The notes under the pieces: model-generated | Database searches by the model: none | Told to the model about the DNA's origin: nothing | The model's input: the letters and a program-made list of their open reading frames with translations, nothing else | Part shown: positions 58,625 through 62,826 of the stretch, in pieces | Layout of the letters: each line of letters starts with the position of its first letter | Position numbering within the stretch: the first letter of the stretch is position 1 | DNA from: Salpingoeca rosetta | Taxonomy: Eukaryota > Protista > Choanoflagellata | Direction: 5' to 3' | NCBI GenBank assembly: GCA_033442325.1 | Contig: JAWQFM010000008.1 | Location: 1,844,287-1,908,286, forward strand | DNA: 64,000 bases | Made by a program: the position numbers and the translations under genes

Positions 58625-59611
58625 AGCTGCGGCTTGTGGCGCTAGCTGATGAAGCATGCGTTCGTGTGTGATTGGTGTGTGTGTGTGTGAGTGTGTGTGT
58701 GAGTGTGTGTGTGATTGGTGTGTGTGTGTGGGGGGGGGGATTCGTGCGTGAGTGATTGTATGCGCAAACACGCGCGCGCGTGTGCGAATAGTGCCGTTGT
58801 TGTTGAAGAGATGTGTGTTTCTTTGGATTGATGTTTTGTCGTGTGCTCAATGTTGTTTGTAAGACTAAAGAGCTTCGAAGACTCTGGTCCCATCACATCA
58901 AAGATGTCAGCCAGCACCAATTGAACCAAACACACACACACTGGCTTGCTTGCTTGTGCTATCATGTGTCGACAAAATGCCATTTATTCCAACAAACGTA
59001 CACCAACAACACTGCACAAATCAAGAAGCAAAGACGGGTCAGGGAATTGTTTTCTGGACATGTGTGCATGTGAATGCATGCTGAGGTGCACAGGAGGGAG
59101 CAGACTGAAACAAACAAACAAACAAACAAACAAACAAACAAACAAACAAACAAACAAACAAATAGCCGCGAACACACAACAGAGAAGAAATAGACAAACG
59201 GCGTGCACACGCACACAATGCACGTGAAGGCAAAACAAAAAGGACAAAGACGACACTGAAACGGGTACAGCACGCAACGTCAAAGTCATGCTGCACGCAA
59301 TCGCACCGTGTGCATACAGCAACACACTCAACTGACACGAGAGAGGAAATGACACACAGCGAAAGCGTGTGTGGGTGCTTGGGGGGGGGGGAGGAGAAGG
59401 AGGAGGAAAGGACTTGGTAGTGATTGGGGCCAACGACAAAAGCCGACAACAACAACAACAACAAGGCGCGAGACAAATGAAGAAAGACGGCGGTGGCAGG
59501 TTAAGAGCGTCACGAGGAGGGAGGAGGTAGTGTGTGGAAGCGTGGGTGAGTATGCGTGGGACAACAGGGAGCCTGCGGCTGTCGCAGTTGGTGGGAATGG
59601 AGCAGCGGCGT

Positions 59612-62115
59612 TCACTTGAGAAGCAGCTTCTCCACAAAGCGGCGCGTCTGCACACACGCACGCACGCACGCGAGTGTGGTGTGGTGTGAATTGGTGTAAG
59701 GTGGTGTGAGGTGGTGTGAGGTGATGGCGGGTGGTGGAGGAGGCAGTGCTTTGCGGTGTTGTCGTTGCACAGTCAACAACAGACAGCACCCAATTAAGGG
59801 GCATAGGCGACTGACCGACTCTGTGACGGGGCGGGCGATACCACGAGCCTTGAGGGCAGCAGCAACCTCCTGGTTGGACATGCGGGCCACCTCGTCCTTG
59901 TTGTACACGCGGCGGCTCGGCGACACAGGGGTCGAGGACTTCAGAAAGGCGGAGAGCGGAAGGTTGGTGGGTGGGAAGGAGGAGGAGCGAAAGAAGCGAG
60001 GAAGTGAGCAAGTGTGAGATTCGTTTCAAGAGCACGATGCTTGGGGTTGGCAACAACACATACACACGCCTACACACAAACACTTACACACCTACACAAA
60101 CACTTACACACCTACACACACGCGCGCACACACACACACTCATGTTGCGCACCTCTGCTGCTGCTGCTGCTGCTGCGCGTGTCTTTCTGCTTGAGGAGCG
60201 GGCTGGCTTCGAGGCCGACGAACGCGTGGCGGCGCGGGTGGCGGACCGGGTGCGCTGGGGACGCGTGCGGGTGGTGCGCTGTGGCAGGCGGCGTGGCTGC
60301 ACCTCCTCCTGCACCTCCCGCTGCTGCTGGACAGGCACAGAGGGCTCCTCGTCATCGGAGAGCAGCGACTCCGAGGGCTCCTGGCTGCTGGCGGCACGGG
60401 TGATGTAGCGGCGCGTGCGCACCTGGCGAACACGCACCTCGCCCGTCTCCTCGTCCTCATCAATGTCAACCTCATCGTCAGAGACAAGCGCGGCAAACTC
60501 CGGCACGCGCTGCTGCTCCGGCGACGCAACGGCAGAGGCGCCGGTCGTGGCGGTGGTGGTGGTCGCTGTGGCGGTCATGGTGTACTCCTGCTCCTGCACG
60601 TCCTCGGCCTGCTTGCCTTCATCGGCAGCGGCGGTGGCGGGGCCGTTGAACAGCGTGGGCCATGCAGAGACAACAAAGGCGAGCATGCCAATGACCCACC
60701 CGGCCTCAATGTCCTGGCAGCTTGTCTGGATGACGATGAGCGCAACGAGCTGCAGGGCAATCTGCACATACCGGCGCAGGTCCTCGGGCTGGCCCGTGGC
60801 CTCCAGTTGCGTGTATCCGAGCACGGAGAGCAGCAGCAGGGCGCCGCCGACGGCAGTGAGGCCAAACTGCTCCTCCACGCGCTGCACGAGCTCAACCACG
60901 GCCCGCTGCAGGGTGAAGGTGGCAATGACGCCGAGCGCGGCAACAAAGGTGAGGCGGCTGGGGCGGGAGTCGCGCGTGACGGCGGAGACAGGGTACACGA
61001 CCGCGCTGACAAGGAACATGACGGGACGCAGGACGGCCGGCACGGCGACCAGGGCGGGCGCCAGGATCATCACGGCAATGCCGCCCAGCACACCAGACAT
61101 GCGGCACGCGTCAATCTCTGATGAGACGCAGCGTGAGATGCATTGTAGTGTGTGTGTGTGTGTGTGTTGTGAGTGTGAGGGGAAGGAAAAGGGGAAGGGG
61201 GCGTGAGCGAGTGAGAGAGGAGTGAGTGCGCACGCGCGCGCGTGTGCGCACGAGTCAGGAGAGTGAGACGTTGAAGATGTGAGTCCACGATCACATTGGG
61301 CGCATAAACACCAACCAACACCACCCACCCACACACCCACACACACAGACACTCACACACCACATACTCTCACGCGCGCGCACACACACACATATACACA
61401 CACACGCACATACTCACACACATCTCGTACGTAAGCACGCGCGCACAAAACATGCTGCGCCTTGTTCAGTGGGGACAACCAACCTGTGTGGATGTCCACG
61501 TTGGCGCCCTTGCTGAAGGAAAGGGTGGCGTTGGTGAATGGGGAGAAGGAGACTTGGGTGTCAGTGACATCGTTGCGTCCAGGGATCTTGACGGTGACCT
61601 TGCACTCGTTGTCGGAGGTGCCAACAATGTGCTCGGAGACGAGGAGGAGCGGGTTGCGCATGACGTTCTGGGGGTCGATGAGGGGCTGGGGCTCCGTCTC
61701 GTAGTAGTATGACTTGCCGCTGAGGACGCGTGCGCCGCTCTCTGGGAGGGAACCGCGCAGCTTGTGAGCAACGGTGTGCACGTCACTGTCGCCACTGGCG
61801 GCCACACGCGCAGTGACCATCATCAGGCAGGCCACTGCTGCCACCAGCATCATCTTCCCAGCGTGTCTGTGCAGGAAAATGGGAGGGGGGTGCGTCAATG
61901 TGAGTGAGTGTGTGTCAATGTGAGTGAGTGTGTGCATGTGATTGAGTGTGTGTGTGCATGTGATTGCGAGTGTGTGCATGTGAGTGTGGATGGGTTGTGG
62001 CAGCAGAGATGAGGTGCCGTTTCACTGTGCCACACACATCACTGGCTCACAAGCGCAAGCGCTCACACACAAAAACCATCACCGGCAGTGGTGTTGGTGC
62101 TGCTTCTCCAAATCC

Positions 62116-62186
<71 letters not shown>

Positions 62187-62198
62187 TGTTGCCATCAT
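59612..62198 (-). CDS. NEMP (TMEM194)-like multi-pass nuclear envelope protein with a C-terminal LEM domain
   Basis: Exons 62198-62185, 61866-61484, 61117-60153, 59938-59816 and 59647-59612. Signal peptide, luminal domain with FSPF, and about 5 hydrophobic segments including EDLRRYVQIALQLVALIVIQTSCQD. C-terminal EVARMSNQEVAAALKARGIARPVTESTRRFVEKLLLK*. Confidence 0.75.
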
Positions 62199-62826
62199 CG
62201 TCGTTGTGGTTGTTGTCGGAAGCGAGCGGTGCAGTCTGTAGCCGTTGCGTGAAGCGTGCGGTTGGCGGGAAGTTTTGAAAAACCGTCAACGTGTGTGCGG
62301 TTTTTTGGATGTGCGAGTTGTAGAGCACTCTTGCCTATCCACCGGTGCGCACGCGACACTTGCGGTTGTTTTGGTTGCCGTCCGACAGCACAAAATCAAG
62401 GCGACCACAACCACAACAAAAAACCAAAAACAAGCCAAGCTGCACGCCATCCATCGCCAACACACTCCACCCCTCACGACCTGGTGCGCGGTCGTTGGAA
62501 GAGCTGTCGTGGGCGCTGCTGTGGTGTTGTGTGTTGTGTGTTGTGTGTTGTGTGTTGTGTGTTGTGTTGTGTGGTGTGTGAGCGCGCTTGGAACTGTGGT
62601 TATGAGATGAGTTGCTGTGTGAACGCTGAGTGCTTTTCCTGCTTGCTCGCACATCCTGCTTGGTTGATGGCTGGCGCGCGTTTTGGCTACACGATCCCCT
62701 TCTCCGTCCCTCGCTTCCTCTCACTGCACTTTCCTCTCCTATTCCCCCCCCCCGCTTGCCTGTCTCGTCCACACCGCCTCCCCCCCCCCTCCGAATCCCC
62801 ACTGCAGCACAGGTCAACAGCGAACC

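What the first reader, a model, noticed from the sequence alone, without database searches (positions are those of the whole stretch)
59612..62198. NEMP-like inner nuclear membrane protein fused to a C-terminal LEM domain
Seen: splicing the last two small exons (59938-59816 and 59647-59612, both phase 0) gives DEVARMSNQEVAAALKARGIARPVTES|TRRFVEKLLLK*. The ORF track hides this by reading through the intron. Known: it aligns almost position by position with the LEM consensus of LAP2/emerin/MAN1 (DxxxLSxxELxxxLxxxGxxxGPIxxSTRxLYEKKLxK). The upstream signal peptide, luminal SPF motif and TM block ending LQLVALIVIQTSCQD resemble NEMP1, and animal NEMP is reported to associate with LEM proteins and BAF. 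Inference: this is a Rosetta-stone fusion that puts NEMP and a chromatin/BAF-tethering module in one chain in a close relative of animals. The LEM sits at the extreme C-terminus, whereas membrane LEM proteins normally carry it near the N-terminus.
Basis: partly seen in the sequence, partly recalled or inferred. Interest (0 to 1): 0.8.

Follow-up and report, generated by a model that had tools for sequence, protein, structure and literature searches.

The report
Choanoflagellate NEMP-like membrane protein ending in LEM
A transcribed Salpingoeca rosetta gene (PTSG_03447) encodes a multi-pass membrane protein, very probably a divergent nuclear-envelope NEMP, whose tail ends in a genuine LEM domain; animals keep these two modules on separate, interacting proteins.

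Summary
The stretch is Salpingoeca rosetta PTSG_03447 (506 aa, minus strand, five exons). Stranded RNA reads and full-length transcript contigs from four studies support all four GT..AG introns, including the two that attach the small LEM exons.

The last 37 residues pass Pfam's LEM cutoff when scanned alone (24.8-26.8 bits against 24). They are 40% identical to the human emerin LEM. A three-species profile ranks emerin and LAP2 LEM structures first in the PDB.

The membrane block hits Pfam NEMP only below threshold here (17 bits against 28.7). The Microstomoeca roanoka orthologue reaches 27.2 bits (E 3.7e-6), and language-model neighbours of three queries are all NEMP clusters. I put NEMP homology at about 0.8.

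The architecture, and the phase-0 intron inside the LEM, recur in other choanoflagellate-like sequences, so it is conserved.

UniRef already names this protein "LEM domain-containing protein". No paper in the held library describes a choanoflagellate LEM or a NEMP-LEM fusion. Koreny and Field (2016) reported Capsaspora as the only non-animal LEM, and they list a BAF homologue in S. rosetta.

BAF binding and nuclear-envelope location are inferred, not shown. This is a new variant of a known kind.

The parts
62185..62298 (-). Exon 1. It holds the 5'UTR and the first AUG of the mRNA at 62198-62196, and codes MMAT plus two bases of R5.
   Evidence: Transcript contigs reach 62298 (records 7 and 11). 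Reading, there is no upstream ATG and there is an in-frame TGA at 62288-62286. The annotated start is the same.
61867..62184 (-). Intron 1 (GT..AG). It opens with a (GT)n microsatellite directly at the donor.
   Evidence: Sequence. Six reads ending at 61868 carry an overhang that spells exon 1, and contigs skip this stretch.
61484..61866 (-). Exon 2. It codes the signal peptide (about aa 8-28) and the luminal beta-sandwich domain (about aa 45-135), with the conserved FSPFxNA(T/S)LSF sequon (N117).
   Evidence: Hydropathy and sequon. AlphaFold pLDDT is 87-95 for this domain. Fragments P0002, P0004 and P0005 align at 46-52% identity.
61118..61483 (-). Intron 2 (GT..AG, phase 1).
   Evidence: 13 junction reads plus contigs in X4, X8 and X13.
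60645..61109 (-). NEMP-like transmembrane block (aa 136-290), within exon 3 (61117-60153).
   Evidence: Pfam PF10225 NEMP scores 17.2 bits, E 0.004, over aa 133-333. The orthologue scores 27.2 bits. The nearest Atlas feature neighbours are NEMP for the TM block alone. Five to six hydrophobic helices are predicted.
60153..60644 (-). Disordered tail, presumably nucleoplasmic (aa 291-454). It has a T-rich run, two [LV][LV]SD[DE]E acidic motifs (aa 343, 384) and an R/T/S-rich basic run.
   Evidence: pLDDT is below 50. The motifs are conserved in five orthologues.
59939..60152 (-). Intron 3 (GT..AG, phase 0).
   Evidence: Eight reads at 59940 carry an overhang that spells the end of exon 3. Contig records 7 and 11 bridge the intron with about 30 letters of the masked GCA repeat.
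59816..59938 (-). Exon 4 (41 codons, phase 0-0). It codes a linker and the first LEM helix and loop. The LEM starts at 59893 (aa 470).
   Evidence: The AlphaFold helices are 468-473 and 476-485, with pLDDT 72-85.
59648..59815 (-). Intron 4, inside the LEM domain (GT..AG, phase 0). It is 168 nt, stop-free and in frame.
   Evidence: 41 junction reads from 20 start sites plus contigs in three more studies. The intron sits at the same position in L001 and L004.
59612..59647 (-). Coding part of exon 5. TRRFVEKLLLK plus the stop codon gives the second LEM helix at the extreme C-terminus.
   Evidence: Helix 494-505.
59412..59611 (-). 3'UTR.
   Evidence: Read depth and contigs extend to about 59412.

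Best explanation
PTSG_03447 is a real, expressed, five-exon Salpingoeca rosetta gene. It encodes a signal-anchored, multi-pass membrane protein that is a divergent member of the NEMP (TMEM194) inner-nuclear-membrane family. Its roughly 170-residue disordered tail ends in a true LEM domain.

Proposed mechanism (inferred):
- The cleaved signal peptide and a glycosylatable beta-sandwich face the perinuclear lumen.
- The TM block holds the protein in the inner nuclear membrane. As in animal NEMP1, it may oligomerise there.
- The flexible tail presents the LEM at its free, membrane-distal end, where it binds the S. rosetta BAF homologue on chromatin.

The result would be a multivalent membrane-chromatin tether. 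Animals obtain the same linkage in trans, through the NEMP-emerin / LEM-protein complex.

Shown here: the gene model, its transcription, LEM homology, and conservation of the architecture in a choanoflagellate clade. Probable: NEMP homology. Inferred: topology, inner-membrane location and BAF binding.
For: Gene model and RNA:
- All four introns have RNA support.
- Reads are strand-specific: the first mate lies on the + strand, which for most stranded libraries means the RNA is on the minus strand.

LEM domain:
- Pfam PF03020 scores 26.8, 24.8, 24.2 and 25.3 bits (cutoff 24) for the isolated C-termini of three species. LEM is the only or the top family in each.
- The three-sequence profile ranks four emerin entries and one LAP2 LEM entry as the top five of 177,635 PDB sequences (E 0.015-0.17).
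- BLASTP against the emerin LEM gives 40% identity and E 8e-7 for that single pairwise comparison.
- AlphaFold predicts a short turn, a helix, an 8-residue loop and a second helix at pLDDT 72-85.

NEMP family:
- PF10225 is the best or nearly best family for P0001 (E 0.004), P0003 (E 3.7e-6, 27.2 bits) and L004 (E 0.05).
- The collection's precomputed Pfam annotation lists PF10225.15 for P0003.
- P0001 and P0003 match at E 8.8e-17 against 1.84 billion proteins.
- Atlas feature neighbours are all NEMP clusters: 0.90 with 206 shared features, 0.92 with 215, and 0.86 with 196 for the TM block alone.
- The best structural neighbour of the Atlas's own model is a NEMP cluster (TM 0.42, 201 residues aligned).

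Conservation:
- The same order (signal peptide, luminal domain, TM block, acidic/basic tail, C-terminal LEM) is found in Microstomoeca roanoka (P0003), in L001 (SRR14727189) and in Tara Oceans contig L004.
- The LEM intron sits at the same position in those genomic loci.

Partner:
- Koreny and Field list a S. rosetta BAF homologue, XP_004995959.

Animal parallel:
- NEMP1 and emerin form a complex, and LEM proteins are enriched among NEMP1 partners.
- Xenopus Nemp1 self-associates through its TMs, co-precipitates with MAN1 and emerin, and binds BAF.
Against: - The NEMP hit for this protein is far below Pfam's cutoff (17.2 against 28.7 bits). Two orthologous TM blocks (P0006, L002) give no NEMP hit at all.
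- Exhaustive phmmer with aa 1-300 found no animal, plant or Monosiga NEMP.
- A fold search with my own model did not return NEMP clusters. Cupin-like hits to the luminal domain dominated it.
- The NEMP profile beyond about position 170, towards region B, is not credibly matched.
- In the full-length protein, the LEM scores 19.1 bits, below the cutoff of 24.
- The LEM loop is one residue shorter than in emerin and reads RPV, not GPV.
- Hydropathy allows five or six membrane helices. Six would put the LEM on the wrong side of the membrane.
- There is no localisation or binding data.
Confidence: 0.7

Rival explanations
1. The protein is a LEM-domain membrane protein, but the membrane part is not homologous to NEMP. 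It would be a lineage-specific multi-pass protein whose weak NEMP hits reflect transmembrane composition.
For: The Pfam NEMP score is 17 bits here against a cutoff of 28.7. P0006 and L002 give no hit. No NEMP was found by phmmer. My own model's fold searches did not list NEMP. Atlas feature scores of 0.86-0.92 lie in a range that shuffled proteins reach 4 to 10 times in 100.
Against: The orthologue scores 27.2 bits, E 3.7e-6, over profile positions 2-169, and is precomputed as PF10225. NEMP is the top family in three independent Atlas queries, each sharing 196-215 features. The overall order matches NEMP1 as described in PMC4422613: signal peptide, luminal domain, TM block, tail.
Confidence: 0.15
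2. The C-terminal helix-loop-helix is a LEM by descent but does not bind BAF. It would bind DNA directly, as LEM-like/HeH domains do, or bind another partner. The protein would then tether chromatin without BAF, or do something else.
For: The loop is one residue shorter than in emerin, and the Gly of the GP(I/V) motif is Arg in all three species. The flanks are strongly basic. Koreny and Field considered BAF-LEM tethering probably restricted to Metazoa.
Against: Pfam returns LEM only, with no HeH or SAP hit at E<=10. The S/A-TRR-x-x-EK core matches emerin. A BAF homologue is listed for S. rosetta.
Confidence: 0.2
3. The fusion is an annotation or assembly artefact that joins two genes.
For: None was found. 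The only oddities are small differences between the RNA and the window at 61566, 59508 and 59514.
Against: Single transcript contigs from independent studies span all five exons. 41 junction reads cross the LEM intron. The same architecture is present in a transcriptome of another species and in independent genomic contigs.
Confidence: 0.01

Closest known systems
Animal NEMP1/NEMP2 (TMEM194A/B; Pfam PF10225)
   Same: Both have a signal peptide, a luminal N-terminal domain, a block of about five TM helices and a nucleoplasmic C-terminal tail. The strongest similarity lies in the last TM helices. [quoted passage not shown] Both have a functional link to LEM proteins and BAF.
   Different: The sequence is very divergent and below the Pfam cutoff. 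No region B (the RanGTP-binding domain) or vertebrate BAF-binding site is recognisable. Instead there is a disordered acidic/basic tail ending in a LEM domain, which no described NEMP carries.
Emerin / LAP2beta / Capsaspora E9C9D3 (tail-anchored LEM proteins)
   Same: Both carry a true LEM domain at the free, membrane-distal end of a long disordered nucleoplasmic tether. The distance to the membrane is about 170-180 residues in each.
   Different: The polarity is inverted. Those proteins have an N-terminal LEM and a single C-terminal tail anchor. This one has a C-terminal LEM after a multi-pass block and a luminal domain. The Capsaspora protein has the emerin-like layout.
MAN1 / LEMD2 (LEM + two TM + MSC domain)
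   Same: Both are polytopic inner-nuclear-membrane proteins with a LEM domain.
   Different: Those proteins have an N-terminal LEM, two TM helices and a C-terminal MSC winged helix. None of these features is present here.
Monosiga brevicollis Mb_Nemp (Shibano et al. 2015)
   Same: It is a choanoflagellate NEMP-family protein.
   Different: It was aligned with animal regions A and B, and no LEM is mentioned. Its sequence could not be fetched here, so I do not know whether it ends in a LEM.

Membership tests
LEM domain (Pfam PF03020) | A profile match at or above Pfam's gathering score (24 bits). | tested here: met
   Isolated C-termini score 26.8 and 24.8 bits (S. rosetta), 24.2 (M. roanoka) and 25.3 (L001). 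In the full-length proteins the score drops to 19.1 and 19.0 bits.
LEM domain (Pfam PF03020) | A fold of about 40 residues: a short N-terminal turn plus two helices joined by a long loop. | tested here: met
   AlphaFold with a nine-row alignment gives helices 468-473, 476-485 and 494-505 at pLDDT 72-85. This is a prediction only. It was not superposed on 2ODC or 1H9F.
LEM domain (Pfam PF03020) | The conserved core motif (S/T)TR-x-x-(Y)EKK after a G-P-(I/V) loop. | tested here: inconclusive
   STRRFVEK, ATRRFLEK and ATRRYVEK are conserved. The loop is RPV instead of GPV and is one residue shorter. Identity to the emerin LEM is 40%.
LEM domain (Pfam PF03020) | Binding to a BAF dimer. | not testable with these tools
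   A S. rosetta BAF homologue (XP_004995959) is listed in the supplement of PMC5630835. No binding data exist.
NEMP family (Pfam PF10225 / DUF2215) | A profile match at or above the gathering score (28.7 bits). | tested here: not met
   P0001 scores 17.2 bits, E 0.004. Orthologue P0003 scores 27.2 bits, E 3.7e-6, and is precomputed as PF10225.15. L004 scores 13.6 bits. P0006 and L002 give no hit. The E-value is significant in one orthologue, but the curated cutoff is not reached.
NEMP family (Pfam PF10225 / DUF2215) | The architecture: signal peptide, luminal N-terminal domain, about five TM helices, C-terminal nucleoplasmic tail. | tested here: met
   Supported by hydropathy and AlphaFold secondary structure. 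The helix count is five or six and is not resolved.
NEMP family (Pfam PF10225 / DUF2215) | A conserved C-terminal region B (the RanGTP-binding domain). | tested here: inconclusive
   The Pfam match in P0003 stops at profile position 169 of 249. The tail is predicted disordered. No region B sequence was available for a direct comparison.
NEMP family (Pfam PF10225 / DUF2215) | Location in the inner nuclear membrane. | not testable with these tools
   Inferred only from the LEM domain and the family resemblance.

The most novel reading that the evidence does not exclude
In this choanoflagellate clade, NEMP-LEM may be the only LEM-domain protein, and so the sole BAF-dependent tether between membrane and chromatin. 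One polypeptide would then do what the NEMP-emerin complex does in animals. A stronger version holds that the fused form is ancestral to choanoflagellates plus animals, and that animals split it. The emerin-like Capsaspora protein argues against that stronger version.
Probability: 0.3. Interest if true: 0.7.

Novelty: new variant of a known kind. Interest (0 to 1): 0.6.

Why it matters
Animal genetics and proteomics link NEMP to LEM proteins. The NEMP-emerin complex supports nuclear stiffness and fertility. How and why the two work together is still unclear.

A natural fusion of the two modules, conserved in several close unicellular relatives of animals, is classic Rosetta-stone evidence that the partnership is direct and old.

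It also places a bona fide LEM domain in choanoflagellates. A dedicated survey found a non-animal LEM only in Capsaspora, and it listed BAF in S. rosetta without a LEM partner there.

S. rosetta can be transfected and edited. The function of NEMP-LEM coupling could therefore be tested in a simple cell with a single fused gene. Possible roles include chromatin tethering, nuclear mechanics and envelope reassembly after open mitosis.

Tried and rejected
- Word-index protein searches. Three were run: the exon-3 protein, the five-sequence profile A2, and P0003 restricted to its TM region. Each returned only the query itself, so no canonical NEMP sequences could be collected. No profile-profile (hhalign) test against NEMP was therefore possible.
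- Exhaustive phmmer with aa 1-300. It found five relatives, none an animal, plant or Monosiga NEMP.
- JGI metagenome scan with the TM-block alignment. A4 had no searchable stretch. A5 matched 249 patterns, none confirmed.
- PDB sequence searches. The single LEM peptide gave only noise; the three-species profile was needed. The TM-block profile gave no hit, so there is no solved NEMP relative.
- Structure prediction. The single-sequence AlphaFold model was poor, with pLDDT 48.
- Fold searches with the better model (atlas, Foldseek PDB, VIA wide). They returned cupin-like hits for the luminal domain and generic helical hairpins. No NEMP and no LEM appeared, which was expected for a 506-residue, half-disordered model. 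The caps left no job to fold the domains separately.
- Earlier findings of this scan. They hold nothing on NEMP, BAF or LEM in this genome apart from this same finding.
- The gene-fusion artefact reading was rejected on RNA evidence.
- I did not send the BAF sequence printed in the paper's supplement to any tool. Its presence in S. rosetta therefore rests on that paper alone.

Full report
**What is there.** On the minus strand of window 59412-62298 lies a five-exon gene. They are bounded by canonical AG acceptors and GT donors. Spliced, they read ...DEVARMSNQEVAAALKARGIARPVTES|TRRFVEKLLLK*. The ORF list does read through the 168-nt intron, which is stop-free and in frame. A word search with the large exon returned one protein at 100% identity: Salpingoeca rosetta PTSG_03447, 506 aa, which UniRef names "LEM domain-containing protein". 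Reading, 62198 is the first AUG of the transcript and follows an in-frame TGA at 62288-62286.

**Transcription.** I laid one stranded raw-read RNA run and Logan contigs of three other studies on 59300-62500.
- The LEM intron junction 59647/59816 is crossed by 41 reads from 20 start sites, and by contigs in all three other runs.
- Junction 61117/61484 is crossed by 13 reads plus contigs.
- Junctions 59938/60153 and 61866/62185 lie next to masked repeats. They are supported by 8 and 6 reads whose overhangs spell the neighbouring exon.
- Single contigs of 1768 nt and 1808 nt carry all five exons.
- Depth inside the LEM intron is only a few per cent to about a tenth of exon depth.

**The LEM domain.** Scanned alone, the C-terminal peptide hits only Pfam LEM (PF03020) at 26.8 bits, E 3.7e-6, against a cutoff of 24. 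The equivalent peptides of S. rosetta (24.8), Microstomoeca roanoka (24.2) and locus L001 (25.3) all pass. No HeH or SAP hit appears at E<=10. In the full-length proteins the score falls to about 19 bits. A three-sequence profile searched against all PDB sequences ranks four emerin entries and the LAP2 LEM as its top five (E 0.015-0.17). The alignment runs end to end, with a one-residue shorter loop and RPV in place of GPV. BLASTP against the emerin segment printed by that call gives 14 of 35 identities, E 8e-7 for that single pairwise comparison. AlphaFold with a nine-row alignment predicts a turn, a helix, an 8-residue loop and a helix at pLDDT 72-85. I take LEM homology as established at about 0.9.

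**The NEMP question.**
- Pfam NEMP (PF10225) hits aa 133-333 at only 17.2 bits, E 0.004, against a cutoff of 28.7.
- Exhaustive phmmer of aa 1-300 against 1.84 billion representatives found five relatives and no canonical NEMP.
- The best full-length relative is P0003 from the M. roanoka transcriptome in EukProt. It matches at E 8.8e-17, 30% identity over 254 residues.
- P0003 hits PF10225 at 27.2 bits, E 3.7e-6, over profile positions 2-169. The collection's precomputed annotation lists it as PF10225.15.
- The ESM Atlas feature search gives only NEMP clusters among the best hits for P0001 aa 1-300 (0.90, 206 shared features), P0003 aa 1-285 (0.92, 215) and the TM block alone (0.86, 196).
- The nearest structural neighbour of the Atlas's own model is a NEMP cluster (TM 0.42).
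- The layout matches NEMP1 as described by Shibano et al.: a signal peptide, a luminal beta-sandwich with a conserved N-glycosylation sequon, five or six hydrophobic helices and a long tail.

Against this stand several points. Two orthologous TM blocks give no Pfam NEMP hit. My own model's fold searches did not list NEMP. Region B is not recognisable. I could not obtain canonical NEMP sequences for a profile-profile test. I put NEMP homology at about 0.8 and record formal Pfam membership as not met.

**Conservation of the fusion.**
- P0003 has the same order of parts and ends ...AMSNLELAAALRARGINRPVVDATRRFLEKQLMKSMA.
- P0006 is an ORF on a 2.9-kb Logan contig (L001, SRR14727189). It carries the TM block and tail. 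Downstream lie a LEM exon ending ...RGIHRPVTDA|gt and, after an intron, TRRYVEKQLLK*.
- Tara Oceans contigs carry the luminal exon, the TM/tail exon and, in L004, a LEM exon ending ...RGVNRPVTDA|gt just before the contig ends.
- L002 carries the luminal and TM/tail exons but ends before any LEM.

The intron therefore splits the LEM at the same phase-0 position in three genomes. In S. rosetta the LEM cassette joins the TM exon through another phase-0 intron, which is compatible with exon shuffling. The tail keeps two [LV][LV]SD[DE]E motifs and basic runs in all members.

**Comparison with what is known.**
- Tsatskis et al. found that human NEMP1 BioID is enriched for LEM-domain proteins. They also found that NEMP1-emerin and fly Nemp-Otefin interact physically and genetically (PMC7455189).
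- Shibano et al. showed that Xenopus Nemp1 self-associates through its TMs and co-precipitates with MAN1 and emerin. It binds BAF through a site conserved only in vertebrates. They list a Monosiga NEMP with regions A and B (PMC4422613).
- Koreny and Field searched for LEM domains across eukaryotes. [quoted passage not shown] Their supplement shows that protein to be emerin-like, with an N-terminal LEM and a tail anchor. It also lists a BAF homologue in S. rosetta, XP_004995959.
- No paper in the held library mentions PTSG_03447. None pairs "LEM domain" with Salpingoeca apart from that survey.

**Mechanism and history (inferred).** The protein most likely sits in the inner nuclear membrane, with its beta-sandwich in the lumen. 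It presents the LEM at the free end of a flexible tail of about 170 residues. That geometry mirrors emerin, but with inverted polarity. If the TM block oligomerises as in Xenopus Nemp1, the protein would be a multivalent tether to BAF and chromatin. Capsaspora already has an emerin-type LEM protein, and Monosiga NEMP is reported with region B. The fusion is therefore more likely a gain within choanoflagellates than the ancestral state. This is untested.

**Verdict.** The LEM label already exists in databases. The NEMP link, the RNA-verified architecture and its conservation appear undescribed. This is a new variant of a known kind, of moderate to high interest to people working on nuclear-envelope evolution.

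Noticed in passing
window 62123-62184 (minus strand, start of intron 1): A (GT)n microsatellite of about 31 units begins exactly at the 5' splice donor of intron 1. The other introns are also GT/CA-rich.
   Followed up: no
window 62418-62500 (+ strand): A divergently transcribed neighbour starts only about 120 bp from this gene's 5' end. Its reads have the opposite mate orientation, and 21 reads splice away at 62483. This is probably a bidirectional promoter.
   Followed up: no
window 61566, 59508, 59514: All four RNA data sets differ from the window at three places: G>A at 61566 (synonymous, Val), C>T at 59508, and a 7-nt deletion at 59514 in the 3'UTR. This is either an assembly error or a strain difference.
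   Followed up: partly
window 59648-59815: The intron inside the LEM is 168 nt, in frame and stop-free. Retention would insert 56 residues into the LEM loop. Reads suggest only low-level retention.
   Followed up: partly
P0001 aa 343-348 and 384-389 (window about 60470-60487 and 60347-60364): Two acidic [LV][LV]SD[DE]E motifs sit in the disordered tail. They could be phospho-dependent or SIM-like. Together with an R-x-R-x-Y stretch, they are conserved in all five orthologues.
   Followed up: no
P0001 aa 45-135 (window 61484-61755): The luminal domain folds confidently (pLDDT 87-95) as a cupin-like beta-sandwich, with a conserved FSPFxNA(T/S)LSF sequon. Its nearest folds are bacterial cupins, HutD and nucleoplasmin-like cores, at weak scores.
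   Followed up: partly
L003, L004, L005 (Tara Oceans and another ENA metagenome): Nearly identical orthologue contigs recur in 19 marine metagenome assemblies. An uncultured relative carrying this gene is therefore widespread in ocean samples.
   Followed up: no
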